A stretch of DNA of 64,000 nt, taken from Hyphochytrium catenoides (taxonomy: Eukaryota; Protista; Hyphochytriomycota). The notes below the pieces were generated by a model. It searched no databases, was not told the DNA's origin, and was given only the letters and a program-made list of their open reading frames with translations. The translations under genes were made by a program, and so were the position numbers. The stretch is taken from contig FLMG01000135.1 in assembly GCA_900088475.1 (NCBI GenBank), positions 62,001 through 126,000 on the forward strand. The letters are read 5' to 3'. Positions 697 to 64,000 of this stretch are shown here, in pieces; the stretch's first letter is position 1; every line of letters begins with the position of its first letter.

Positions 697-1125
697 ATGG
701 ACATAAACAGGGTGCGGCCTCCAGCAGTAACCAACTGCCAAGTCGTATGGAACTATATCACATCGTATGATCAGTGGTGGCCAAGCATTGCTTTCACGTG
801 CTTCGATGAGATGGAGAAATTTGGCCTTCAATCTTCGGTCGAGCAGATCATTCTAGAAACTCAATTTGTGGATATACCAGAAGACAAGCTCATATTCCGA
901 CGGTTAGGGTCTAACGTGACGGTGATGAAGGACAACACGCAGGTAAGCCCTATTCTTAGTAAGATGTGGTGCACTTCTAACTCTTACTTTAAGACATACG
1001 TGCTGCCGTACGAAGCGAACTACGAACGTCTGAGCAAAGCCGTTCCGAAGGATATGGACCTAAAACATGAATTTTTGGCGGGCCTTGAAGAAGCAAACCG
1101 CCTAATTCGGCTTAGCAAAGAGGAT
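697..1125 (+). other. PWWP-like domain (first two exons of the CDC6-like gene)
   Basis: CQVVWNYITSYDQWWPSIAF matches the PWWP pattern VWak...PWWPa; LPYEANYERL...EFLAGLEEANRLI resembles the PWWP C-terminal helices. Motif recognition only. Confidence 0.6.
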
Positions 1126-4100
1126 GTGAGTCTTTTATGACCGTTACGTGAACTCCTTCGCCCCGCTTACTGTTTATTGCAGCCAAAGGCTACCCCTATC
1201 CGCCAGCTCCCTTTCGGTAGGAACGGCAGCACAGGCAACACCGGAGATCAGATCCAGGGAAAAGATAAGCTAACATCTAAACAAAAGTGGAAAGCTGTGG
1301 CGCGAGACCTCAAAGCTTCTGGCTGGACGGAGTGGAAAGGGCCTCAGAAAACCATATATTTTAGGCCAGGTATCTCGCCAGGCGAGGGCATCCTTGGTAG
1401 AGACTTCTTTCACGGGGAAGAACAAGTGTTGCGCTATTTGGCTCGGATGGAATCAAAAGACGATGACAGGTTGCCCCAGATAGACAGACTGTCTGAGAGA
1501 AAACGAAATCAGGCATTACACTCACCGCACCACCCTGAGGAAGTTCGCTCTGAGTCTCCAACAGGGAGTGATGCTGCAGCAGTCAACCAGGCTTTACCGT
1601 CCGCGATCAATACAGGAGCGTGCGATCAGAAACAGAATCTTCTGATGGCTCCCGAGTCTATAGCTAACGTGGTGGTTGCTACCCTTTCAACCTTCGCCAA
1701 CGCCCTCCTCAGGATGGATCAACAAGTGGGGGCCGGAGTTGGGAGCAGCGCTTTTGCTAATCCTCAGGCTCTTCAAAGCTTGACAGCTATTCTAGCAGCT
1801 AATGCCTTACCTGTGTCAACGGGCACTGTAGGCGGTCTAGCAGACCTGATGCGAGGACTCGGGTCCAAGTCAACAGACAAAGTGTTACTTGAGAAAGCAT
1901 CAGATGGTGCAGCCGCTTTTCAATCTGACAGTCGCACGGAAGGTTCCTCGAGTGTTGGACTAGCCACTGGTCTGTCCGGTAAGGATATGAGCTCCTCAAT
2001 GGCCGATGTAGCCACAAAAACAAGCTCTGGGTCAGATGCAACAAAGATCCCACTGGGTGGCATGGCAACGACAAGCTCAGTAGAGGAGAATAGAAACCCC
2101 AACCGGGTCGGCTCGGTTGGCGTCGGCCACAATCTCAAAGAAGCAGTGGCCCTACAAAGTGCAAAAAGAGCTCCTTCACGGCAACACTTGGCGGATATTG
2201 AAGAGAAGGGCTTCGACACGATCAAGACAAAGTCAACGCCGCGTACAAATGGGGAGACGGAGAGGGCGGCAGGACAAAAATCTGGACAAAGTCCAGAAAG
2301 TCAAGTCACGCCTGTAACGAAAGTAGGTGTAGAGTTACTCAATTCGGCCATTTCTGACAAGACTTTGACCTCTGATGACGTGGAAACGGAGGTTGAAGAC
2401 GCCTCAAACACGGAGAAGTCGGATGTGTTCGGGATGTCTCGTGCAAACGCTGGGATATTCCAGCCCGACCTTACGTCCAATAGTGAACTAAGCTTTGAAG
2501 AAGTCTGGAAATCCCTAAAGCGCCAAGGTTGGAGGAGAAAGAATGGGCTCTACCTAAGGCCGATTAATGCGGTAGAGTCTAGGGAATCGTATATAGAAGG
2601 TTATTCCGCCTTTAGGACACAGGCCGAGGTGATGCAAGTAGCCGCTTCTGAGAATCTATTGGGAGTGTGGAACAAGACTTGTCCAATCACGCCAAAGCTT
2701 AACCGCATTCCTGCGATGAGCAAGGGAAACCAGCAGATTCCAACAAAGGCGATGGCGAGCAAAATCAACAAACAAACTGAGAAGACTAAAAAGCCAAAGC
2801 CATTCATACCGACAGTTGAAGAGTTAGAGCAAGCTCAACGTCGGCTTCGCGGGCGTCCGCAATGGTGGCATGCATGTTGGAAAGCTTTGTCCGCTGCTGG
2901 ATGGAGCTTTAACGGACGATATACGCGGCCACGGGGTCAAGATTCGAAAAGAACGCGGCGAACCCTGGGAGTTGACGTCTTTGAATCTCAGCAACATGTG
3001 GTGGCCTTCCTTCTCTCTCGCGGGGAACTGCCTGACCTTCCCGATGACGGCATGGCAAACGATTCCGACACCGATGGGTCTGATCTTGGACCTGCAGACG
3101 GAGAGATAAATATAGTGAACAAGGAGGCAGCTATAGCTGTGAAGTCGTCGGACAAACCAATTATCACTGCCCCCAAATCCAAGACTGCGAATTCTTCAAG
3201 GGTCGGCCCTTCTCTCAAGGCAAACAAGACTGACACGTCTTCCGCTGGGAAAAAGTTGTCGCCGGAAAAAAGTGAAGGACCAGAGTGTCATCCTTTTTCT
3301 TTGTTGTGGCAGGAGCTTCAGCAGCTAGGGTGGAAGTGGAGTGCTGGAATGTATAGAGCACCTCGTCCAAGAAGCGAGTTTGGCCAGAAATATGTTGCCG
3401 GTGTGAACATGTTCAATTCAGAAGGAGAAGTTATGGACTACCTCAATGCCAATCCCAGCGTTATGGCACGGCTTTCTTGCCATATTCCACTCAGACCGAC
3501 AATCAACCCTAAGAGAACGGACAGTATCGCGCACAGGAGTCCAATGCCTAAACAGTCACACACACCAACACCACGAGGAAAGAAGGTTGATGACCTTTAT
3601 TTGACAAATTGGCAGTCGATATGGGTTACTCTCAAGTCCGAAGGGTGGGTTTTCCGCAAAGGCTCGGCCCTCTGTAGCTCTTGTTTTCTGAGACCTGGCA
3701 AAGACGTAAAGAATGGTACCCCTGGTGTGGACTACTTTTATGCTAAGGAGGAAGTGCTGCAGTATCTTAAGGAGCAAGGTCGTCAATTCGACACGCTCTT
3801 TCCAGCCACAGACAGCTTAAGTGTACGAATGTCCGGAAAGGGTCGAACAGGCTTTTCGGAAAGCTGTGAGGCTGGTTATTCCTGCCGCCCAGAGTGCGAG
3901 AGTGAAGAAGAAGCCTCTGCGGTGTCAGAAGGGGCGGACGCGGAAGCTAACAGTGGGACGGAAGACGTTCTGACGGAGGAAACGTTGCTTGAACGCATCT
4001 TCATTGGACCTGATGAAGTAGACCTTAAGCAATGGCAAAAGATCTGGGACCACCTAAGGGAACAGGGCTGGAAATGGTGTCATGGTAGCGGCGTGATTTC

Positions 4101-6916
4101 CACATTTCGTTATCGGAAGCCTGGTACTCTCATCAAAACTGGTAGAAAGGGCATTGACTGGTTTGATACACAAGCAGAAGTAGTAAGAAGCTTAGCAAAG
4201 ACGAAAGAGCTCTTCCCAATCTTCGGTCTTTCATGTACCGCCAGTGAGCCTCCGCCTTTAGTGGTCAGCACGTCAAGACGCGTTGAGACGCCTCAAGAAG
4301 CCACTGCAGATGGAAAAGAGACTATGAGCCCGGAGAAGGCTAACGGCGAGAGTAATCTTTCCTCGAGAGGCTTAGGCTTCAGTTCCGGTCACTATCGGAT
4401 CACCTGTGATGATGGTGCTCCCATCTTCTCTTCGCCAAGGAAAAGCTCACCCACTAAAGCGAGATTGCCCAAGAACTTCCTCTTTTACGCGGAAGAGGTT
4501 TCCAAAGTAGAAAGCAAGACTCTTCTTAGGGTCAGTGAGACCCATGGATACGGCAAACACTGCTGGATTCTGGCCTCAGACAGTAAGGGCGAGGTGACAG
4601 TCGAACCTGACAATTCGCAGGAAGATTTGGTCCTCGAGAGTGATGTAGCCAGCGAGCCCAGTCCACACACAGCAAAGCGGGTCCAATTTGAGCTCGCGTC
4701 CCCATTACCGGAAGGCACAAGCAAGAGGAAGAGAAAGGAGGTAAAGTCCCATGTTCCCTCCTTGATATAATCGCGCTAACTCTAGACTGCGACAGTCGGA
4801 GCTAGGAAATGAAGAGACTCCAGCCCGTGACTTGAAGAGGCCAACTGTAGAACCTAGCATGGTTGGCGTATCTCCTCTTGGTCAGCGTTTACCCGTAGAA
4901 GACCCTTTTGCAACTATGGTCCTTTACCCCCTAACATGCGGCTGTCTGCAGACAAAAATCCAGGGCTAAACATATCAGTCGCTGAAACTCTTAAAAGGTC
5001 ACTTCCTACTACTCAGTTCCAAGACAAAAGTGCTGCGATTACAACTATGGGTCTTTTGGAGGTCAGTGCACGCAATAAACGCCAGAGGACTACCTTACTC
5101 AACCTTGTCAGCTAATGATGTGATCAGTCGTGCTTTTTGCCAAGCGGGAAGCCCCCACGCCTGGTGAGTCGCGATGCTGAGAGACGCTTCATCCATGAAT
5201 TCCTAGATCGTTGCATAGCGGGAGGGCCGGGGTCCTCACTATATATCTTTGGGGCCCCTGGTACCGGCAAATCAGCTACGGTTGCACACTGCCTCGCCAA
5301 GATTGATGGTGTCAAAGTTAAGGTACGTTTGTACTACCTTGACCGAGAGCGAGAGGACGTTATCTATCACCAGTCCTGCGTCTTTACACAAGCACAGATG
5401 TTATCTGTGCTTTATCTTTCTTGAGGGCCGAGCCTTCAATTGTTCACTCCAACCTACAGACCTTGTCACTCTGCAGTCTTCTTTCCTATGCTACTTAACG
5501 TGTATCTAATATTGACTGGCACATGGATGTGATAAACTTCTTGCCGGTCCTTTGTAGAGTGTGATGATAAACGCTGGCAGCGTTGGAGATGATAGCCAGT
5601 ACTTAGTCTCCACCATTGTCAAGGAGCTGTTCAACTACAAGTCGGAAGATGGCGATCCTCTCGACTATCTAACTAGCAGAGTGCAGCAAAATGACAAGGA
5701 GACTTGCTGGTAGGGCTTAAATATCGCAAACGCTTTCACATGTTCTTAGCTCATGTTATCTCTATTATCACTACTCGTCCACTTCGCGCTTTGAACATAT
5801 GTAGGGTAATTGTTGTGGATGAGATAGAGAACTGTCTCCATAACAATGTCACCCAGACAATGATCTACAACCTGTTTGCTCTGTCGCATCGTGAAGACAC
5901 ATCGATGGTTCTCATTGGTGAGTCTGGAGACCCAGCTAGATACCTTTCTCGCTATTCCTCACCATTAAGAACAGGGATATCAAACTCGGCTGAGCTTAAA
6001 CAAAGTCCATTTCCGGCTCTTCCCTGGCGGAACTGTAAGTCCTCTTACTCTAACAGAAATGCTATTGGACTCGTAAAATTCAATGGGAAGCAAAAATTGA
6101 CTCTCTTTGGTTCATTATGTTAGGCGAACCTTGTCAGCTTCAGTTTAAGGCGTACAGCAAAGAAGAGCTTCATGATCTCCTGAAAGCAAGAGTTGCCTAT
6201 GCCGCTGCTAAGCTTGGAGTAATGGATGATTCACGCTTGGTCGATCCAGAGGCCCTTGAGCTTTGTGCCCGAACGGTGTCAGCAAACTCTGGAGGCATGC
6301 GAAAGGCGCTAGAGGTTTGCAGGTAAATGCTATCATCCGGCTGTGAATTCCAACATAACTAATAACGTACACTGTAGTCAAGCAGTGAAGGAAGCTGCCA
6401 CGTCACTTAGGGATAGGGATGGCGCTATCGAGGCCGTGCCAGCTCCCCTTATTACCCTTCTTTCCATGAAGAGGGTCCTTCAAAATCTAAGCAGCTTATC
6501 ATTACGTGAGGCAGTCAATGCGCTTCCATTCCGCTCAAAGGTTAGTCATTTCACCTTGTGAAGGGAATAAGGCATCTCTCACCCATTGATTCTCTCAGGT
6601 TGTCTTATGTGCAGTGCTTCTGCTAGTTTCGGAGGTGGCCAAGCCTATAGCTTGGTCCAAATTGTTTGAACAATATGCCATGTGCTCTCAGCAGGTTCTT
6701 CGAACCAGCTTAGCCCGGCCTCCTCCCTCTCAGTTCAACGACCTAGTTGATCTACTGGCTGAGAAAGGCTTTCTGCGGACCGTCTCAGAGAAAGTATATA
6801 GCCCTAGTGGGAGATCGGAAGCAGCCATTGTACTGACCGCCAATGTTGAAGATTTGAAGGCCATCCTAGCCAAAGAGAAGGGCCTGAACGCCATTCTAGC
6901 TGCCGAGAACCTCTAA
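697..6916 (+). CDS. CDC6: Cdc6/Orc1-family AAA+ replication licensing ATPase with a very long N-terminal extension (PWWP-like domain plus six MBD-like repeats); multi-exon
   Basis: Predicted exons 697-942, 994-1125, 1183-4740, 4796-4880, 4952-5061, 5128-5322, 5558-5709, 5805-5917, 5975-6034, 6124-6322, 6378-6540, 6599-6916 join in frame through GT..AG introns. Cdc6 motifs: LVSRDAERRFI, SLYIFGAPGTGKS (Walker A), VIVVDEIE (Walker B), LIGISNS (sensor 1), FKAYSKEELHDLLKARV, ALELCARTVSANSGGMRKALEVC (sensor 2), and a C-terminal winged-helix-like segment FNDLVDLLAEKGFL. The 5128-6916 part is secure; the link to 697-4740 depends on two small predicted exons. Confidence 0.8.
1288..4197 (+). repeat. 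Six divergent copies of a ~50-aa protein module (about 1288-1443, 2494-2646, 2866-3015, 3295-3447, 3610-3771, 4033-4197)
   Basis: WKAVARDLKASGW..YFRPG..GRDFFHGEEQVLRYL; FEEVWKSLKRQGW..YLRP..GYSAFRTQAEVMQV; WHACWKALSAAGW..YTRP..GVDVFESQQHVVAFL; FSLLWQELQQLGW..YRAP..GVNMFNSEGEVMDYL; WQSIWVTLKSEGW..FLRPG..GVDYFYAKEEVLQYL; WQKIWDHLREQGW..YRKPG..GIDWFDTQAEVVRSL. Confidence 0.9.
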
Positions 6917-7140: not shown

Positions 7141-7788
7141 TCAGTTTGCATGTTTTCTCGCTTGCTCCAGCTCTTGGAGCTTCCTATTTGCTCGTTGTCT
7201 TTCTTCCTCGTCTAGCTGTTCTCGTGACTGTGCTGTGTGTTGGACGATGCGCGACAAGAGCGACTTGTTGGGCAGTAACCTGCCTGGCTTAAGATACTGT
7301 CATGAAGGGAACAATGCAAAAACGCGCAACGTAAGCTGCTGTTATGTTCTGCAGGCACCAAAGCGGACTCCTTATCTCTTTACCTCTGAAGATCCGCCCT
7401 TGACTGCAGTCACGGCACGCTTGGGGAGGGCAAACCTCGATCTCCTCTCGTGCCTTTGGTTTTGGTCCTCCTTATCCCGAGGGGAACGGCTGCGACTGAC
7501 TCGACTTCTGTCTCCCATGCTGTAGCTACCCGCTCCTCTAACTCTGTCCCGACTGCGACTTCGCTTTTTTTCTCTACTATCAGACCTTCCTCTACCTCGC
7601 CTACTACTATCGGACCTTTCTCTACCTCGTCTTACTCTAATGCTACCATTTCGACGAGAGCGTTCCTCGGAATCCGTGTCCGATCTGTGACTTCTTCTCC
7701 CTCTCTCTCTTACTCGCCCCCTGCCGCTATCGCTGTGATGGGACGAGGATGAACTAGCCGTTCTCGACCTCTTCCCTGTTCTGTCCAT
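7141..7788 (-). CDS. Arg/Ser-rich (RS-domain) nuclear protein, 2 exons
   Basis: Exon 7788-7384 is RS/RD/RE-dipeptide rich (SRSRSPR). Intron 7383-7297 (GTAAAG..ACAG) leads to exon 7296-7141, YLKPGRLLPNKSLLSRIVQHT...RQRANRKLQELEQARKHAN*. Confidence 0.7.
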
Positions 7789-8613
7789 CACCTCTAACGG
7801 TATGATGCCAGCAATTTTGTTTACTGTCCACTGACACCGGAACTTTAATTGACGCGGAAGGTGAAGACGGTTCTCTAGGGCTATAGCTTCGTGCAGAACG
7901 GCGTTAGTTGCTCTGCATTTAAGCCCAAAACTCCTCCATTAGGTGGCGCTCGTCTTGTCTTTCTCGTCTTCAGTCCTGGGATGGCAGAGTACGCTAACCA
8001 ACTAATAAGAATGCGCCATGCCTGTACCCGCGAATATCCCTATGCCAGATCTTGTCAGCCGTCGATCTGAATGGGTAGTAGAAGAACACCTTGCGTTGGC
8101 TCCTAAGAGAAGAGAGATCCGTGGATATCCTAGCCAGGTAAACTTATGAGCTGGTAGCAGTGAGCATGGGCCCCAGCCATCGTGGTGGCCACAACTGTTG
8201 ATGTCGTGTGGTCTGTCGCCGCTCCCTTCTTGCAGAAGCGACATTGATCACATCTGTCATCGGCGGATGTTCGAGAAGCGTTGCTTCCTACAGTAGAAAT
8301 ATTTGTACGGCACAAAACCGATTTATCAGCTCCGGGAGTAGATCTGAAGAGCACAATGATGAATCTTCGAGGTTTGTGTGGAAGGAGCTCTTGTTTTCTT
8401 CAGGAATAGGAAAAGTTGTGTGTGTTGGAGACTTGAGACGACAAGACGGTAGATCTGAGTTGCCAGGTTACGGAGCTTTGGCACTCTTCATGGCAGAAAG
8501 ACAGGCTGAGAAGCAGAAAATACTCTCAAAGTCTATTGGCTTCTTCAGCTCTTGTCATCTTACAAGCTGTACTCCGGAGGCCGCGTCAGGGACTGTGACT
8601 TCACGAAGCAAAG

Positions 8614-43584: not shown

Positions 43585-45120
43585 ATGATGCGGATCACCA
43601 GCGCTTTGGGCTTGCTGGGGCTCTTTGCTGCGTCCGCCTCGGCAGCAACTAACCCAATCGTCGTGAAGGGTGCCTATATGTATGACTCAGTTACCAAGGA
43701 ACGCTTCTTCGTCAAAGGGTTGACTTATGAGTACGCTGTGGACGACACAAACTATGCCAAGTGGAAGGATAGACTTGACAAAGTTATTGCCTTGGGAGTC
43801 AACTCCCTTAGGCTTTACAATATCAACCCAGACCTCAGTTATGACAAATTCATGACGGATATGGCAGCAGCAGGGGTATACGTCATGCCTGCTGCTACCC
43901 CTGGAGGTGATCCCTATTTCGAAAACTACAAGTACTGTACGCTGAACCGCTTCAGCCCTCCAGATGAGAAGGTACTCAACAACTGTTACCCCGCCTGCCT
44001 TCTGCAATATGGCAAAAAGGTGGCTGCCAACTTTGCCAAGTACGACAACACTCTCGCCTTGATCATTGGAAACGAGGTAATGCAGTATAACGCTACGTCT
44101 GCTCCTTGCGTCAAGCAGTATGCATCTGATCTCAAGGCCTGGATGGGCTCAGCTGACGGAGTGAAAGCTATGAGAACGTTACCTCTAGCCTACGCTGAAG
44201 CAGATTCCGCACCAGAGCCTGCAATAGTCATAAATCCCAAGGCCGATGCCAACGAATGGGCGACGCTGCGTAACCAGTTCTTTGTGTGCGACGATAAATA
44301 TGTGAACGGTGTCGGCCAATCATCTCTGGATATTACCATGGTCAACACGTACCGGTGGTGCGATGACCTCTCTGGTCCGACGGGGTATGATAACATCAAC
44401 AAGGCGATGAAGGGATTTCCTGGAGCGGTCCTCTTTGGAGAGTTCGACTGTGCTAAAGGGGGTCAGCGGAAGCTGGACTCGGCTGTGAAATACTTGTTCT
44501 CTAGTAAGATGACGGAGGTCTTCTCTGGTGGTTTCGCCTACACATGGGGCACTGCCGGTGTCGCCCCTGCCTTGGCGGGCGATGGCTATCAGCTGGTGAC
44601 AGACAGTGACAGTGACATTGCTGGGGATCCTGGAAGCGCAACCAATGACAACTATGACAAGCTCAAGGCTGCGTACACTGCTGTTAAACCTACAAGCACT
44701 CCTGGCACATGGTCGTCCAAGTCTGATCTCTGCACTAAGTTTTCTGGAACCGTCCCTGCTGGAGAGGACTTCAAAGCCACATGCAAGACAGTTGTGTCCG
44801 AGATGTCTACAAAGACTAACAGCAAGGTCAGCTGGCCCATCAAGACAAGAGAGAATGCTGGATGCAATGACCTAGGCGAGCCCTGCCCAGTCGCTTATCC
44901 TAAGGGTCTGAAGACAACTCAATCTACGCTCTGCGGAGGTTCTGCACCTACTCTGGCTCCTAGCAAAGCGAGTGGTGGTGGTAATGGAGGGAACGATAGT
45001 GATGCTGGTAGCAATAAAGAAGGGACAGGCAACAACAGTGCTGCCACTGGGATCCCTTATTCATGGGGTTCCTTGGCTGTAGCGCAGGCGGTTGTCCTTC
45101 TGCTCTGGCAGTACGCTTAG
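43585..45120 (+). CDS. GH72 beta-1,3-glucanosyltransglycosylase (Gas/Gel type), signal peptide plus GPI-anchor signal, intronless
   Basis: 511-aa single ORF with signal peptide, ERFFVKGLTY, LGVNSLRLYNINP..YDKFM...AGVYV, FAKYDNTLALIIGNEV (acid/base Glu), NTYRWC, GEFDC (nucleophile Glu), MTEVFSGGFAYTW, a Gly/Ser/Asn linker and a hydrophobic C-terminus. Confidence 0.93.
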   Translation: MMRITSALGLLGLFAASASAATNPIVVKGAYMYDSVTKERFFVKGLTYEYAVDDTNYAKWKDRLDKVIALGVNSLRLYNINPDLSYDKFMTDMAAAGVYVMPAATPGGDPYFENYKYCTLNRFSPPDEKVLNNCYPACLLQYGKKVAANFAKYDNTLALIIGNEVMQYNATSAPCVKQYASDLKAWMGSADGVKAMRTLPLAYAEADSAPEPAIVINPKADANEWATLRNQFFVCDDKYVNGVGQSSLDITMVNTYRWCDDLSGPTGYDNINKAMKGFPGAVLFGEFDCAKGGQRKLDSAVKYLFSSKMTEVFSGGFAYTWGTAGVAPALAGDGYQLVTDSDSDIAGDPGSATNDNYDKLKAAYTAVKPTSTPGTWSSKSDLCTKFSGTVPAGEDFKATCKTVVSEMSTKTNSKVSWPIKTRENAGCNDLGEPCPVAYPKGLKTTQSTLCGGSAPTLAPSKASGGGNGGNDSDAGSNKEGTGNNSAATGIPYSWGSLAVAQAVVLLLWQYA

Positions 45121-53135: not shown

Positions 53136-53696
53136 CGTTGGAGATGGAAGCCTACGCAGGGTAAATCAGCGCGACGAAGGAGAGAAGAGAGGAGTGAGGG
53201 AGAAGAGGAAAGAAAAGAGCCAGAGGAGCAAAGGACAGAGAGAAGAAGGGCAAGTGACGAGGAAGGGCAAGAGTGACGAGACGTCATCGAAGAGATGGGA
53301 AGGAAAAGTGCAGCCTTGCCAGTAACAGGAGACAGCTGAGGTTTTAGCTAGAGCAGCTACATAGAATGGATAGGTCTGGAAGAAAAACACGCTGTGGGGG
53401 AACAAATGTAGGACGGGGCCTTTCTGGTCATCCTGAAATGCTATCAATGAAGAGGAAGAAAAGAGCGGCGAAGCAGGAGACTAGTTGTAGCTGAGAGACG
53501 AGGACGAACGTGAAAGAGGAGACCGTGATATAGAAGTCAAAGAAACAAGCAGAGAGACCTTATCAATAGTAAATGGGACCTTATACTCTCATCTCCCTCT
53601 AACTTCACCACCTCTGAGAGCCCAGTGGCTTATCATCTGAACATTTATTTGATAGCCAGAGATCTTGCTCTAAACCTTACTACGGGACGCACCACT

Positions 53697-55516
53697 ATGG
53701 AGAAAAAAGACGGTGTTATGTGGTCCACCAATGTTCAACCCTGGCGGCGATCAAAGCGCCTGACAGCCTACCTACAGCAATCCAGCAAGTGGGTTCTCAC
53801 ACTCTATGCTGCGGCCACCAGCTGCACCATCTATCTCATCATCTATGGCTTCAGACGACCATGGACGTCAGGAGATTGGGGAGAACAGAAGATCTTTGGG
53901 TTGAACCGTAAGGTGGCAATGCAAATATGTCAGACCATGGGGATTGTTCTCGGAAAAGCCAGCACAGTCTATGTTGCCAGCAACTTGCAAGATTCCTCTC
54001 GTTTCTCAGCCCTCTGCGGTCTCCCTCTTCTCTCTGTTTTGATGTGGATAGGGGTCGGTCTTACTTATGACACCACGTGGGGCCCTCTCCTCTTCATCTT
54101 CTTTACTGCCGCTCCTCTGGCTTATGCCTGGTCTCTTCTCTACCGCTATTTGGAGGGCCGTAGCACAGGTGACTTCCTTGGCGCCGTCCTGTCCTCAGCG
54201 ATGATCTTTGGCAGCGGCATTGCAAAGTCCTTAGGTGGCGCAGTGGAGCCCGTTGTAGGGAGTCAATGGATGCCAACAGCTTGCTGCTTTTTACTCCTTC
54301 CTATTTACCTGGCAGCCTGCTATCTGATAGACAGCCTTCCACCTCCTTCTTCGAGTGAACAGGAAAAATATGGCGTAAGACAGGCCATGTCTAGAGCCCA
54401 GCAGCGGGAGTTCTTTGTTAAATATTGGCCGGGGCTACTTCCTACCACCGTCTCTTACGTGCTTCTTTCTGCCATCAAGGACTTCCGAGACACTTTTCAG
54501 GCTGAAATTTTCTCGGAGGCGGCGGCATGGAACGGCAAAGGTGAAGGTCTGGAAGGGGGAGGCTTGCCCGACCCTGCCACGTATACCGCCACAGAGGTGC
54601 CTGTTACGGTGTTCATTCTCTTTGCTCTTAGCTCGCTTAACCTCATTGAAGACAGCGGAAAGAGTGTTATCATTCAGTACATTCTACAGCTTCTGGGTAC
54701 GTCATCAGCCCATCTAACCCTCGCTCACTTCTAGCTACGTCTCATTGCACGTACTCTTCGTTGCCCTCCTGCCTTGTTTGTCGATGTCTCCCCTCTCTGG
54801 CATCCTGTTGTTGAACTCCTCTCGAAAGCATGTCAACCTACTAGGTACATTCGCCTTTCTCTCTGACATTTAAGTTGCATCGTCCTAGCCAACCTTCCTA
54901 ACTGAGGACTGCTGTAGGGCTCGTGCTTTGCATCCTTTCGCAGTTACTCTTCAACGCGGAGTACCTCAGTGTGGGCGTGTGGTATGTTGCGATTGGTATT
55001 GGGAGCTTCCTGGCGTTCCTTCCAACTGGATCCATGCTTTATGATCGGCTGATGGGAGCTATCAAGCAGCCTGGAACAGCTGTCTTCATGATCAACATCT
55101 CAGACACTGCCGGCTACTCTGGGACGATCTTGTTGCTGCTATTTCAATCGTTCGGGTCAGGGAGCTACCTTCTTGTAGAGGATCAGAAGAGCGGAGGCGT
55201 CACTGGACCAAAGAGTAGAGGGACTTATACAGCGTCATTGGGAACATTCATCATCTATGGGTGTTCGTTGTGCGCACTCTCTCTCCTTTGGGCTCTCGTC
55301 TACTGGGGCAGAACAATATTGCGCATCCGCTCTGGAGTGCGCAATACTACATCGAAGGGGACGACAGCAGTGGCGATAGATGGAGGAGAAGGCGATGCTG
55401 GAGTAGGAGTTGGAGCGCAGAAGGGAGAGGCGATAGTGCTCTCTAGTGTCAAGCTTTCAGAGAGTTCGGAAGGAATGAGGAGGGTCGCCAGCAATAGTGG
55501 CCAAGCTTCAACATGA
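53697..55516 (+). CDS. DUF5690-like MFS-type membrane protein, one intron (54697-54917)
   Basis: Multiple TM segments; YGFRRPW, KVAMQICQTMGIVLGK, YLEGRSTGDFLGAVLSSAMIFGSGIAKSLG, WMP, PPPS, KDFRDTF, YTATEVP, LYDRLMG..GTAVFMINISDTAGYSG. These match DUF5690-family motifs as I recall them. Confidence 0.75.
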
Positions 55517-61171: not shown

Positions 61172-61508
61172 GCTGCTGCTCCTGCTGCTGGCATCATCAT
61201 CAGATACGGCACGCTCTGCCTCCGCAGCAGCCTTCACCTCGAGCATCACTTTCGCAGCTCACACCGACTGCCGTCTCGAACGTTTGAAGGCTCTTTGAAG
61301 AGAAGAATAGCATATTTCAGAAGCGGTGATCTGGAGCTCCGGAGGCTCATAAGGGAAAGCCAGACTGGGGCCCTCCAGAGAGAAGAGTTCACGGACACGC
61401 GTGCTCTGAACTTCTGTCTTCTCCAGCTTCTTAGCTCGGTTTTCTCCTTATCTGCATTCTATTCCTAGTAGTCTCCAGTCTTATCCCATCTTGGGCCTGC
61501 TCACAGCC

Positions 61509-64000
61509 ATGGGGGAGAACGGAATCCACGTGAGAAGCTTAAGCTCTAACCTCTTTGGATACATATTCTTCAGCTTTGGCCTCGAATTGGCCTCGTACTC
61601 GGCGACTTCAGTTGTCTCTGTCTTACGTTTCTATCTTGCTAGTACGCTGCCTAGTTGGGTTTGCTTTTCTAATACTATTGACGGTGTCACTTTATCCATA
61701 ACGAACGCCTTCGTCCTGCAGGTAACTCTGGGCGATAACCATCATGTTTCGGAGGAGACTGCCCGCCGTGCTGAGAGCTACAAGGAGGAAGGCAACAAGC
61801 TCCTTCAAGGTCGGTCCGACTCAAATAGCTTTGCTTCTCTTCTGCGCATTGATAATGACTCTCGACGTTCCACGTCTTTCTCCCACGACCATAATATACA
61901 CTCTCCCTCTCCTTCCTCTTGCCGATTCTTGCACTGCTTCTCCATTCATCTTCGTCTATCAGAGTTCCACCTGGCTCAGGCTATCGACAAGTACACGATG
62001 GCAATAGAGCTCCGGCCGACAGCCATCTACTACTCCAACAGAGCGATGGCCCAGATGAAAAGCGAAAACTTCGGTCTAGCCATCCTCGACGCCACCAAGG
62101 CTATTGAACTAGATCCAGAATACGTTAAAGGTGCTATGCGTCCCTTCTGCTTGGGGAGTCCATCTGTAGCGAGTTGGCTTTCAAACCTTTATAGGTGTCT
62201 TTCCCCTAATAGCATTCTGTCCCTACATCTTGTCTTGGCTCCGTCAGGTCCTATTCGTCCTTATATCCCATGTCGTTCCGAGTTCCCGTGACTCCTCAGC
62301 TATTCCTCTTGCCATTCGTGTAGGCTACTACCGACATATACCATGTCGTTTCCGGGATGGGGCTGACTCCTCAACGACTCCTGTTGCCGTCCCTGTGTAG
62401 GCTACTATCGACGAGGTGCGGCAAATCTTGCGCTCGGGCACCACAAGGCTGCGTTGAAGGACTTCAAGCAAGTTGTACGGGTAAAACCAAACGATAGGGA
62501 TGCGCGGAACAAGTTGAGAGAGTGCGAAAAAGCTGTCAAGAAGGCAGCTTTTGAGGCTGCAATCAGCTCTGAAAAGACCCGCCCAGTCTCAGAGACAGTC
62601 AACGTAGATGCGATAGAGGTGGAGGACAGCTACGACGGGCCTCATCTGCCCGATGATCCAACGCAGGCAACCCATGAATTCTGTCTGGCTCTGGTCGACC
62701 GCTTTAAAAGACAAAAGCTGTTGCACAGGAAGTAAGTATTGCCGATGATGAGCCAAAGTTTAGAAACAAGAATAGGGGACTTAGCACACGCAAGGAGGGG
62801 CTTCAAGAGTAAGAGGAATGAGTCATCTCAACGTCGGTCTCAAGGGGAGATAGGGTGTCACTTTGTATCCCGCAAGACCGTGGCTTCAGGATAAACATAC
62901 CAGCTACCGTGTGGACGATGGTCACTTTAAGGGTGGTGGTTGATTGCACTAATTCTCTGTTGATTATGTGCTAGGTATGTTATCAAGATCCTGCTGGCGA
63001 TGAAGCAATTGTTGAGTTCGGTACCCAGTCTCCTGGAACTAAAAGTGCCAAACACTAACCCCGCAGGCAAGGCTCCAGAGGTATGTGGCTTAGTAGTAGG
63101 TCGAGGGGAGCCGTCTGACTTGGGGTCAAGGCTGCTCAGCTTCCATTTCATTCATCGCTGCTTATATTGTCTGCCTTAATTGCCCTATGACAGGGGCACT
63201 TCACGGTGTGTGGAGATACTCATGGTCAATTCTATGACCTTTGCAACATATTCCACCTTAATGGCTACCCGTCTGATGATAACCCCTATCTCTTCAACGG
63301 TACGCAAGATCTCTATTTCTGGGAGCAACTTTAGACAACCAGTTCATCTTAAGGATGTTTTTTGCTTGCAGGGGACTTCGTTGACCGAGGCTCTTTTTCA
63401 GTGGAGGTTATTCTGACGCTGTTTGCCTTCAAGCTGGTCTACCCAGAGGTGAGAAGGGAGATCACGCAACAGAACTAGTGGGAGTTCCGCGAGGAATGCT
63501 AGAGGCGGAGGGCGAAGGCCGTCCGCTGATTATGAGGCGTTGATAGCTAACTGCTACTGCCTTCGCGTCCATAAGGGTCTCCATTTGCTGCGTGGAAACC
63601 ACGAGAGCAAGAACATGAACAAAATCTATGGCTTCGAGGGCGAGGTCAAACACAAGTACGATGAAGTGGTCATGCAGCTTTTCGCAGAGGTCTTTAACTG
63701 GCTACCTCTGGCGGCGACAATAAATAATAAGGTAAGCCACTGCATCGATCGCTATCTTGGAACCCAAAATTGGGAATCGCTGTCCTAGATGGGCGCCATA
63801 GCCACAGTTAAGAAAATTCCGCCGTCTCAGCCAGCGATCTAGGCTCAATATCTAATTCTCCGCACGTATATTAGTGACTGTATGCGCCAGGCCCTACGAA
63901 CCTTCTCACATCTGGTGTTCTTAGGTTTTGATAGTCCACGGAGGTCTCTTCCAGCAGGAGGGCGTCACACTCCAGGATATCAAGAACATTGACAGGAATA
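61509..64000 (+). CDS. PPP5C: Serine/threonine protein phosphatase 5 (TPR plus PPP catalytic domain), runs off the window end
   Basis: TPRs ([51 protein letters not shown]), [53 protein letters not shown]. Confidence 0.97.
62268..62412 (+). repeat. Imperfect ~77-nt tandem duplication spanning a PP5 3' splice site
   Basis: ccatgtcgtt...gactcctca...ttgcc...gtgtag|gctactaYcgac occurs twice, with AG at 62322-62323 and 62399-62400. Confidence 0.85.

What the first reader, a model, noticed from the sequence alone, without database searches (positions are those of the whole stretch)
697..6916. Giant Cdc6/Orc1 ATPase fused to a PWWP-like domain and six MBD-like repeats: candidate chromatin-reading origin-licensing factor
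Seen: ORFs 697-1140, 1177-4770 and the Cdc6 fragments from 5137 join in frame through introns 943-993, 1126-1182, 4741-4795, 4881-4951 and 5062-5127. The two bridging exons (SELGNEETPARDLKRPTVEPSMVGVSPL; DKNPGLNISVAETLKRSLPTTQFQDKSAAITTMGLLE) are stop-free in the required phases. The product is about 1,750 aa: PWWP-like domain, six WxxLxxxGW modules, AAA+ domain, winged helix. Established: canonical Cdc6 has only a short disordered N-terminus. Origin factors gain specificity from appended readers such as the Orc1 BAH domain, the plant ORC1 PHD and the S. pombe Orc4 AT-hooks. PWWP domains typically bind H3K36me nucleosomes. Inference: this lineage may steer licensing through a histone-mark reader plus a multivalent DNA-binding array built into Cdc6/Orc1. 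I do not recognise this architecture from any described Cdc6/Orc1.
Basis: partly seen in the sequence, partly recalled or inferred. Interest (0 to 1): 0.9.

Follow-up and report, generated by a model that had tools for sequence, protein, structure and literature searches.

The report
Cdc6-type replication loader with reader domains
A diatom-like alga seems to encode its DNA-replication licensing ATPase (Cdc6 type) as one 1,776-residue protein with a PWWP-like domain and six copies of a little-known ~60-residue module in front, a layout also found in water moulds and never described, though no transcript could be checked here.

Summary
The five proposed introns are GT..AG and join in frame. A 12-exon model (697-6916) gives 1,776 aa without an internal stop. 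It has six ~60-aa Trp-rich modules and an intact Cdc6/Orc1-type AAA+ core with a winged helix.

The fusion is probable (about 0.75) but not proven.
- No RNA run was listed.
- In-frame joinability is not evidence: 86% of shuffles also give a path.
- The Walker-A exon has no start codon.
- Bridging exon 4796-4880 has coding codon usage in exactly the required frame (P 0.0014).
- CDK sites and a KRKRK stretch sit just upstream of the AAA+ core.
- The same order, modules then Cdc6-like ATPase, lies in single uninterrupted ORFs in Thraustotheca and in a metagenome contig. It is conserved in Saprolegnia and Aphanomyces.

The N-terminus folds PWWP-like (Z 8.3). The modules are related to Pfam DUF7650; an MBD relationship stays unproven. 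They are also fused to ORC2, ORC5, BRCT, HMG and SAP domains.

Cdc6 is favoured over Orc1 by pairwise scores, but the tree is unresolved.

It is a new variant of a known theme: reader domains appended to licensing factors. Relatives are filed as hypothetical proteins, and I found no paper. The scan had already noted the repeats on this same stretch (s1-341992).

The parts
697..6916 (+). Proposed single gene of 12 exons and 1,776 aa. Exons: 697-942, 994-1125, 1183-4740, 4796-4880, 4952-5061, 5128-5322, 5558-5709, 5805-5917, 5975-6034, 6124-6322, 6378-6540, 6599-6916.
   Evidence: In-frame assembly with no internal stop.
724..1125 (+). N-terminal PWWP-like domain (residues ~10-126), with the WWPS motif at 769-795. 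It is split by the 51-nt intron 943-993.
   Evidence: AF2 model with pLDDT 62 shows a five-strand barrel plus helices. VIA-align best match is the BRPF1 PWWP at Z 8.3, and 11 of the top 12 matches are PWWP domains. Pfam finds nothing.
1264..1470 (+). Module 1 (residues 154-222).
   Evidence: Family HMM E 1.5e-18.
2476..2661 (+). Module 2 (residues 558-619).
   Evidence: Family HMM E 3.7e-11.
2854..3036 (+). Module 3 (residues 684-744).
   Evidence: Family HMM E 3.8e-11.
3277..3465 (+). Module 4 (residues 825-887).
   Evidence: Family HMM E 5.8e-13.
3604..3792 (+). Module 5 (residues 934-996).
   Evidence: Family HMM E 3.9e-22.
4018..4209 (+). Module 6 (residues 1072-1135), the copy that was modelled.
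   Evidence: Family HMM E 3.1e-20. AF2 model with pLDDT 84 has helix, three strands, helix.
4432..4828 (+). Linker with clustered full CDK consensus sites (SPRK, SPTK, TPAR; a further SPEK lies just upstream of this span) and a KRKRK basic stretch at 4723-4737.
   Evidence: Four of the six [ST]P.[KR] sites of the protein lie at residues 1175-1320, just before the AAA+ core.
4741..4795 (+). Critical intron. Donor GTAAAG, branch-like CTAAC at 4776-4780, acceptor 4795. If unspliced, the ORF stops at 4768-4770. Acceptor 4785 would give a short tail and a stop.
   Evidence: Sequence. The AG at 4785 lies 6 nt from the branch A, against 12-17 nt in the four other introns inspected, so 4795 fits better (inference).
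4796..4880 (+). Bridging exon B1 (28 codons), coding only under the fusion model.
   Evidence: Codon-usage likelihood in the required frame against shuffles gives P 0.0014. Its frame contrast is in the top 0.12% of 10,348 windows elsewhere. The 21 codons before the internal ATG 4859 give P 0.02.
4881..4951 (+). Intron with donor GTCAGC, CTAAC branch and CAG acceptor. It contains ATG 4936, the start of the rival short Cdc6 model.
4952..5061 (+). Bridging exon B2, coding in both models.
   Evidence: Codon usage P 0.0012 against shuffles.
5062..5127 (+). Intron needed in both models.
   Evidence: The AAA+ exon has in-frame stops at about 5113-5118 and no ATG before Walker A.
5143..6904 (+). Cdc6/Orc1-type AAA+ ATPase, lid and winged helix (residues 1383-1773). 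Walker A is at 5251-5274, Walker B at 5806-5829, sensor 1 at 5911-5988 (split by an intron) and sensor 2 at 6291-6314.
   Evidence: PDB best match is human CDC6. Pfam gives AAA_16 and the Cdc6-ORC lid. Thraustotheca P0037 matches at 25% identity, E 2e-30. The last exon matches WHD_Cdc6 clusters at 0.96 in the Atlas.

Best explanation
One gene (697-6916, + strand, 12 exons) encodes a 1,776-residue replication-licensing ATPase of the Cdc6/Orc1 family, more Cdc6-like than Orc1-like. Its catalytic AAA+ core and winged helix are intact. In front of them sit a PWWP-like domain, six copies of a ~60-residue helix-sheet-helix module related to Pfam DUF7650 (possibly a distant MBD relative), and a linker with CDK sites and a basic nuclear-localisation-like stretch. 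Inferred mechanism: the AAA+/winged-helix part does the conserved job of joining ORC on DNA and loading MCM2-7. The N-terminal reader (methyl-lysine cage type) and the multivalent module array tether the loader to particular chromatin or DNA, which biases where licensing occurs. The CDK sites next to the core would give cell-cycle control as in other Cdc6 proteins. Shown here: the reading frame, the domains, their homologues and the recurrence of the architecture. Inferred: splicing into one mRNA, ligand specificity of the PWWP-like domain and the modules, and any effect on origin choice.
For: (1) The frame is open through all 12 exons. (2) The Walker-A exon 5128-5322 has no ATG and has in-frame stops just upstream, so it needs upstream exons. 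(3) Exon 4796-4880 is coding only if fused. It shows coding codon usage in the required frame alone: P 0.0014, frame contrast in the top 0.12%, and P 0.02 for the part before ATG 4859. (4) In Thraustotheca clavata one stop-free ORF (L001 2983-6393) holds six modules and the Walker-A part of a Cdc6-like ATPase that is 25% identical to ours, E 2e-30. Orthologues in two Saprolegnia and four Aphanomyces species have 3-6 modules plus the ATPase. A metagenome contig has two modules plus a Cdc6-like ATPase in one 1,135-codon ORF. P0114 has two modules plus a Cdc6-like ATPase. (5) The same module is fused to ORC5 (P0007, P0016, P0024, P0038) and to ORC2 (P0011, 18 modules in one ORF). It is also fused to BRCT (7 proteins), HMG box and SAP. 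(6) Ostreococcus-type Cdc6 carries two canonical Pfam MBDs. (7) The PWWP-like fold matches at Z 8.3. (8) Four CDK consensus sites and KRKRK lie in the 210 residues before the core. (9) Ours scores 84-100 bits against Cdc6 proteins and 45-53 bits against BAH-bearing Orc1 proteins. (10) In a second DNA data set, frameshifting indels fall only inside introns 943-993 and 1126-1182, and the one exonic indel is +3 nt.
Against: No RNA run was listed, so no junction is confirmed. An in-frame GT..AG path arises in 86% of shuffles. The large ORF has its own stop at 4770, 30 nt past the proposed donor, and the first AG after the branch-like CTAAC (4785) gives a stop. Stand-alone module arrays of 1,000-1,300 aa with no Cdc6 nearby exist in diatoms (P0001, and P0003 of Thalassiosira profunda). 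ATG 4936 would give a plausible 441-aa Cdc6. No close orthologue (over 35% identity) was found, so the splice sites cannot be checked by comparison. The oomycete N-terminal profile does not detect ours. The tree leaves ours on a long, unplaced branch. The module fold has no significant solved match.
Confidence: 0.72

Rival explanations
1. There are two adjacent genes. The first is a stand-alone PWWP-like plus six-module protein (697 to stop 4770, 1,321 aa). The second is an ordinary short Cdc6 starting at ATG 4936 (441 aa) that uses only intron 5062-5127 of the three bridging introns.
For: The ORF has its own stop at 4768-4770. ATG 4936 is in frame with exon 4952-5061. Stand-alone module arrays of similar size are common in diatoms and have no Cdc6 beside them. 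In-frame paths are common by chance. No RNA evidence exists.
Against: Exon 4796-4880 would be non-coding, yet it has strong frame-specific coding codon usage. Only 165 nt would be left for a 3' end, a promoter and a 5' UTR. The 47-residue N-terminus would carry no CDK site, whereas the sites and the KRKRK stretch lie upstream in the large exon and in exon 4796-4880. The fused order occurs in uninterrupted ORFs elsewhere.
Confidence: 0.2
2. The ATPase is the Orc1 orthologue, or an undivided Orc1/Cdc6 paralogue, rather than Cdc6. The appended readers would then replace the BAH domain of Orc1.
For: The tree cannot reject ours grouping with the BAH-Orc1 clade (AU p 0.395). Orc1 is the family member that usually carries chromatin readers (established knowledge). 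PDB scores to ORC1 are only slightly below those to CDC6 for the oomycete relative.
Against: Pairwise scores are about twice as high to Cdc6 proteins as to BAH-Orc1 proteins. The best PDB match is human CDC6 for ours and for both relatives. The CDK-site cluster next to the core is Cdc6-like. Pfam finds no BAH.
Confidence: 0.2
3. The modules are not DNA or methyl-DNA binders. They would bind RNA or proteins, given their dsRBD-like topology, and act as a scaffold. The fusion would then serve regulation or localisation rather than origin choice.
For: The best solved-structure matches include dsRBDs at Z 3.0-3.8 and Dicer at Z 4.3. These are equal to or better than the MBD matches at Z 3.0-3.6. 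No Pfam MBD hit occurs in 96 modules. No Arg is strongly conserved apart from the [RK] before the invariant Pro.
Against: The fusion partners are almost all DNA or chromatin proteins: ORC2, ORC5, Cdc6, BRCT, HMG, SAP, the PCC domain, piggyBac-derived proteins and Agenet/Tudor. Five of the six modules carry a net positive charge. Several AFDB carriers are auto-named MBD. hhalign puts GW, Y..P.G and S..EV..YL in MBD register.
Confidence: 0.25

Closest known systems
Eukaryotic Cdc6 (human CDC6, PDB 8rwv chain F; yeast Cdc6)
   Same: It shares the AAA+ core with Walker A and B, sensor 1 and 2, the lid and a C-terminal winged helix. It also has a CDK-site cluster N-terminal to the core. Human CDC6 is the best solved match.
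   Different: The N-terminal extension is about 1,380 residues with folded domains instead of a short disordered tail. The sequence is very divergent, on a long branch.
Orc1 with appended readers (BAH domain; PHD insertion in plant ORC1, PMC7058166)
   Same: The principle is the same: a chromatin reader is built into a licensing AAA+ protein.
   Different: The readers differ (PWWP-like plus a module array, with no BAH or PHD). The ATPase scores much lower against BAH-Orc1 proteins.
Saprolegniales 'hypothetical protein' family (THRCLA_00954, SPRG_05888, SDRG_05441 and Aphanomyces orthologues)
   Same: The order is the same: an N-terminal WP-motif region, 3-6 modules, then a Cdc6-like AAA+ and winged helix. 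Thraustotheca and both Saprolegnia species have six modules.
   Different: Identity in the ATPase is only 25%. The genes are almost intron-free. The N-terminal resemblance is at motif level only and is not statistically supported. Orthology with ours is neither shown nor rejected (AU p 0.456).
Ostreococcus-type Cdc6 with two Pfam MBD domains (P0117/P0163 cluster)
   Same: A small DNA-reader-type domain sits in tandem in front of Cdc6.
   Different: These are canonical MBDs (PF01429, E 3.8e-16) and are not detected by our module HMM. The lineage is a green alga. There are two copies and no PWWP-like domain.
Pfam DUF7650 (PF24662) and the MBD fold
   Same: DUF7650 matches 30 of 96 family modules, and whole carrier proteins match down to E 2.7e-12. 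The fold has TM 0.71 to a plant DUF7650/DUF7952 cluster. The motif order resembles MBD.
   Different: Pfam finds nothing in our own large exon, even at E 1. Compared with MBD, the module has an extra N-terminal helix and an insert of about 9 residues. No significant MBD match was found.

Membership tests
Cdc6/Orc1 AAA+ initiators | Walker A, Walker B, sensor 1 and sensor 2 motifs in order | tested here: met
   GAPGTGKS, VIVVDEIE, LIGISNS and GGMRKALE at residues 1419, 1494, 1529 and 1607.
Cdc6/Orc1 AAA+ initiators | Significant sequence similarity to solved Cdc6/Orc1 proteins | tested here: met
   The Walker-A exon alone matches human CDC6 at E 3.4e-6 and ORC1 at E 2.3e-4. The whole core scores 84-100 bits against Cdc6 proteins.
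Cdc6/Orc1 AAA+ initiators | Cdc6/ORC-type lid and C-terminal winged helix | tested here: inconclusive
   The lid (PF22606) matches at E 2.2e-4, 21.5 bits, below the 27-bit cut-off. Pfam Cdc6_C is not found on the last exon. The Atlas score to WHD_Cdc6 clusters is 0.96, and the alignment to P0037 runs through its Cdc6_C region.
Cdc6 (as opposed to Orc1) | Groups with Cdc6 orthologues in a phylogeny | tested here: inconclusive
   Ours sits on a long branch in an unresolved fork. Neither a union with the module-bearing clade (p 0.456) nor one with BAH-Orc1 (p 0.395) is rejected. Pairwise scores favour Cdc6.
Orc1 | BAH domain N-terminal to the AAA+ core | tested here: not met
   Pfam finds no BAH in exon 1 or in the large exon at E up to 1. 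Exon 2 and the two bridging exons were not scanned. BAH is patchy among Orc1 proteins (PMC7058166), so its absence is not decisive.
PWWP domain | Five-strand barrel followed by helices, matching solved PWWP domains | tested here: met
   BRPF1 PWWP matches at Z 8.3 over 111 residues, followed by NSD3, T. brucei, S. pombe and LEDGF PWWPs. Foldseek top hits are PWWP domains but with E 0.24 or more. The model pLDDT is only 62, and the model includes the 17 intron-encoded residues as a loop.
PWWP domain | Match to the Pfam PWWP profile | tested here: not met
   No family matched exon 1 at E up to 1; exon 2, which holds the rest of the domain, was not scanned.
PWWP domain | Aromatic cage that binds methyl-lysine (H3K36me or H4K20me) | not testable with these tools
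   Candidate residues by motif are the Y and W of SYDQWWPS and the F of LIFRRLG. This is inference from the sequence only.
MBD (PF01429) | Match to the MBD profile | tested here: not met
   None of 96 modules matches at E up to 0.1. hhalign of the family against a canonical MBD gives E 0.099, probability 0.6%.
MBD (PF01429) | MBD fold | tested here: inconclusive
   SETDB2, AtMBD6, MBD4, MBD2 and MeCP2 match at Z 2.7-3.6, mixed with dsRBDs at equal or higher Z. Foldseek against PDB and Swiss-Prot is not significant. Atlas feature likeness to MBD clusters is 0.76.
MBD (PF01429) | Conserved Arg fingers, Asp and Tyr that read methyl-CpG | tested here: inconclusive
   The family alignment has no strongly conserved Arg except the [RK] before the invariant Pro (86%). 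The residue after the invariant Phe varies. The register to MBD is not reliable enough to map the residues.
DUF7650 (PF24662) | Match to the profile | tested here: inconclusive
   Thirty of 96 family modules match, and carriers reach 34.8-43.4 bits against a 27-bit cut-off. Our own large exon gives no hit. The fold has TM 0.71 to a DUF7650/DUF7952 cluster.

The most novel reading that the evidence does not exclude
In stramenopiles, and perhaps some alveolates, a lineage-expanded DUF7650/MBD-like module has been attached, often in long arrays, to several pre-replicative-complex subunits (ORC2, ORC5 and Cdc6). It may therefore form a dedicated origin-specification system that reads a DNA or chromatin feature. 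This gene would be the diatom-side Cdc6 member, additionally armed with a PWWP-type histone reader.
Probability: 0.3. Interest if true: 0.8.

Novelty: new variant of a known kind. Interest (0 to 1): 0.62.

Why it matters
How replication origins are chosen outside yeasts, animals and plants is largely unknown. A licensing ATPase that carries its own histone-reader-like domain and a six-fold putative DNA-binding array makes that question testable in an algal lineage of great ecological weight. The same module sits on ORC2 and ORC5 in related organisms. The module itself is widespread, has no described function, and partners almost only with DNA and chromatin proteins. These fusions therefore also give a first functional handle on DUF7650-like domains.

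Tried and rejected
- **RNA evidence.** Two run searches listed no RNA run. The three small runs with the same species label held nothing on the stretch.
- **Word-indexed protein search.** A search with the large exon found nothing.
- **No search with the spliced ATPase.** The spliced protein has no reference, so it could not be sent to the large databases. Only single exons and relatives were used.
- **In-frame joinability as evidence.** Rejected after the shuffle test.
- **Generic donor-branch-acceptor motif.** It is not enriched over simulated sequence in this window.
- **A stricter donor rule.** It fails on the real 4741 donor, GTAAAG.
- **Metagenome scan with the Walker-A exon.** It gave three weak, unrelated AAA+ loci with no modules.
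- **P0001 and P0003 as orthologues.** Rejected: no Cdc6-like sequence lies within 4-7 kb.
- **Oomycete N-terminal profile.** It does not detect our N-terminus.
- **Polymorphism in the bridging region.** One SNP and no indel, so it is uninformative.
- **Solved-structure sequence search with the module profile.** Nothing found.
- **Literature searches.** Five searches found no description of the module or of the fusions.
Full report
**1. What is in the sequence**

They join ORFs 697-1140 and 1177-4770 and the first AAA+ fragment in frame, and they give the two bridging peptides as quoted.

I completed the downstream part by requiring an open frame and Cdc6-like continuity. This adds introns 5323-5557, 5710-5804, 5918-5974, 6035-6123, 6323-6377 and 6541-6598. 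The result is a 12-exon, 1,776-residue model with a single terminal stop.

**2. Is it one gene or two?**

This is the crux, and transcripts could not settle it.
- No RNA run was listed for the locus. Only three DNA runs hold it. Three tiny runs with the same species label hold nothing.
- The existence of an in-frame path is not evidence. When 4741-5127 is shuffled, 172 of 200 shuffles still allow a GT..AG path with at most three introns.

Four other observations carry weight.
- **No start codon in the Walker-A exon.** Exon 5128-5322 has in-frame stops at about 5113-5118 and no ATG before the Walker A motif. Upstream exons are therefore needed in any model.
- **Codon usage of exon 4796-4880.** This exon is coding only under the fusion model.
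  - It has codon usage typical of the rest of the gene in exactly the required frame: +0.17 bits per codon, against -0.58 and -0.53 in the other two frames.
  - Against composition-matched shuffles this gives P 0.0014.
  - Its frame contrast lies in the top 0.12% of 10,348 windows elsewhere in the window.
  - The 21 codons that precede the internal ATG 4859 still give P 0.02.
- **Acceptor choice at intron 4741-4795.** The AG at 4785 would give a premature stop. It lies only 6 nt from the A of the branch-like CTAAC. In the four other introns inspected that distance is 12-17 nt, and 4795 lies at 16 nt. This is an inference.
- **Regulatory sites before the core.** Four of the protein's six full CDK consensus sites lie in the 210 residues before the AAA+ core, together with a KRKRK stretch. 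One of the four lies in exon 4796-4880. This is where Cdc6 proteins usually carry such sites. The 47-residue N-terminus of the rival short model has none.

The rival model has gene 1 ending at stop 4770 and a 441-residue Cdc6 starting at ATG 4936. It remains possible. Stand-alone module arrays of 1,000-1,300 residues exist in diatoms with no Cdc6 nearby. I put it at about 0.2.

**3. Comparative support**

An exhaustive HMMER search with the large exon found 105 proteins that carry the module. None is more than about 35% identical, so no close orthologue is available. Among them and their relatives:
- **Thraustotheca clavata THRCLA_00954 (P0037, 1,364 aa).** It has six modules followed by a Cdc6/Orc1-type AAA+, lid and winged helix. 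The ATPase is 25% identical to ours over 354 residues, E 2e-30. In its contig one stop-free ORF (L001 2983-6393) holds all six modules and the Walker-A part of the ATPase. The fusion there does not depend on any splice model.
- **Saprolegniales orthologues.** Saprolegnia parasitica, S. diclina and four Aphanomyces species have orthologues of 1,273-1,525 aa with 3-6 modules.
- **Other carriers.** A JGI metagenome contig has two modules and a Cdc6-like ATPase in one 1,135-codon ORF (L002). P0114 has two modules plus the ATPase.
- **Ostreococcus.** An 830-residue Cdc6 cluster that includes Ostreococcus lucimarinus has two canonical Pfam MBDs in front of Cdc6.

The module is also fused to other replication and chromatin proteins.
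- ORC5 in four proteins (P0007, P0016, P0024, P0038), the last labelled Durusdinium trenchii.
- ORC2 in P0011, with 18 modules in one 2,897-codon ORF.
- BRCT in seven proteins, and also HMG box, SAP and a PCC domain.
- AFDB cluster matches add an ORC5 with one module (A0A2R5GF74) and piggyBac-derived proteins.

The fused architecture is therefore real as a class, and it recurs on pre-replicative-complex subunits.

**4. The domains**

*N-terminus.* A model built on 16 aligned N-termini has pLDDT 62. Its first row is window 697-1125 read through the in-frame 51-nt intron as a loop. The topology is that of PWWP: two strands, a helical insert, three strands, then helices. VIA-align ranks the BRPF1 PWWP first at Z 8.3, and 11 of the top 12 matches are PWWP domains. 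Foldseek agrees in rank but not in significance. Pfam does not detect it.

Many diatom module proteins start with the same WWPA-type motif, and the oomycete proteins have a KWPAL version. The oomycete profile does not reach ours statistically.

*Modules.* There are six copies. The family consensus is W..(L)W..L...GW.W..G.GL...YY.[RK]PG.....G..G.DYF.SE..V. The invariant or near-invariant residues are W, L, G-W, P, G and F.
- The AF2 model (pLDDT 84) has helix, strand, strand, short strand, helix.
- Solved structures give only Z 4.3 or less. dsRBDs (Z 3.0-3.8) and MBDs (Z 2.7-3.6) are interleaved, and Foldseek is not significant.
- Pfam MBD matches none of 96 modules, whereas DUF7650 matches 30.
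- The fold has TM 0.71 to a plant DUF7650/DUF7952 cluster.
- hhalign against a canonical MBD places GW, Y..P.G and S..EV..YL in register, with a 9-residue insert, but at E 0.099.

I therefore file the module as DUF7650-related. 'MBD-like' is an untested lead. Canonical methyl-CpG reading is not supported by the conserved residues.

*ATPase.* All catalytic motifs are present.
- The best solved match is human CDC6.
- The last exon matches WHD_Cdc6 clusters at 0.96 in the Atlas.
- A 32-sequence tree leaves ours on a long, unplaced branch. Neither a union with the module-bearing clade nor one with BAH-Orc1 is rejected.
- Pairwise scores are 84-100 bits to Cdc6 proteins and 45-53 bits to BAH-bearing Orc1 proteins.

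I call it Cdc6-like, with Orc1 not excluded.

**5. Mechanism**

The conserved core should act as in other eukaryotes. It binds ORC on DNA and, with Cdt1, loads MCM2-7 (established knowledge of the family). The added parts most plausibly tether the loader.
- The PWWP-like barrel would bind a methylated histone tail and DNA.
- The module array would bind DNA or chromatin multivalently.

The basis for this is guilt by association: the partners are nearly all DNA or chromatin proteins. Five of the six modules also carry a net positive charge. All of this is inference. No binding specificity is shown.

**6. Novelty**

Reader domains on licensing factors are known, for example the Orc1 BAH domain and the plant ORC1 PHD insertion (PMC7058166). 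This combination is not described in the papers I could search. Its relatives are filed as hypothetical or generic AAA+ proteins. It is therefore a new variant of a known kind.

The scan had already noted the six repeats on this same stretch (s1-341992).

**7. Limits**

- There are no transcripts.
- No close relative is available to validate the splice sites.
- The spliced protein could not be submitted to the large searches.
- The PWWP model is of moderate confidence and includes intron-encoded residues.
- The organism is only inferred to be diatom-like, from the nearest module proteins (Cyclotella, Thalassiosira) and from Atlas taxa.

Noticed in passing
window 7372-7791 (- strand): A 139-codon ORF is rich in Arg/Ser dipeptides (RSRSR, RRGRGRS). 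It resembles an SR-type or RS-domain protein and converges on the 3' end of the gene.
   Followed up: no
window 43585-45120, 53625-54734, 61491-62291 (+ strand): Large single ORFs match Pfam Glyco_hydro_72 (E 1.7e-36), DUF5690 (E 1.6e-50) and TPR.
   Followed up: partly
window 943-993: Intron 1 is 51 nt, in frame and stop-free. Retention would insert 17 residues into the loop between the last two strands of the PWWP-like barrel. A second DNA data set has +2 and +1 insertions here.
   Followed up: partly
window 4380-4620: An ordered-looking segment lies after module 6 (HYRITCDDGAPIF ... GYGKHCWILASDSKGEVTVEP). No family or homologue was found for it.
   Followed up: partly
L002 1576-4980: The stop-free ORF is 1,135 codons. 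It holds a second module upstream of the start called for P0094 (660 aa, GTG start), so the public gene call is probably truncated.
   Followed up: partly
P0117/P0163/P0165 cluster: The Ostreococcus lucimarinus Cdc6 RefSeq model is 442 aa. An 830-residue form with two canonical MBDs is seen on 468 contigs, so the reference model may lack the MBD part.
   Followed up: partly
L007 959-9649: One 2,897-codon ORF from a Logan assembly has 18 modules followed by an ORC2 RecA-like domain.
   Followed up: partly
P0108 (Aphanomyces astaci, partial): This protein has two Cdc6-like regions (59-423 and 1029-1312). It may be a merged gene model or a tandem duplicate.
   Followed up: no
window 917-6916 against run X2: The second DNA data set differs at about 51 single positions, some at half depth, which suggests two haplotypes. 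Of the 40 listed, 30 are exonic (20 non-synonymous, 10 synonymous) and 10 are intronic. None creates a stop.
   Followed up: partly
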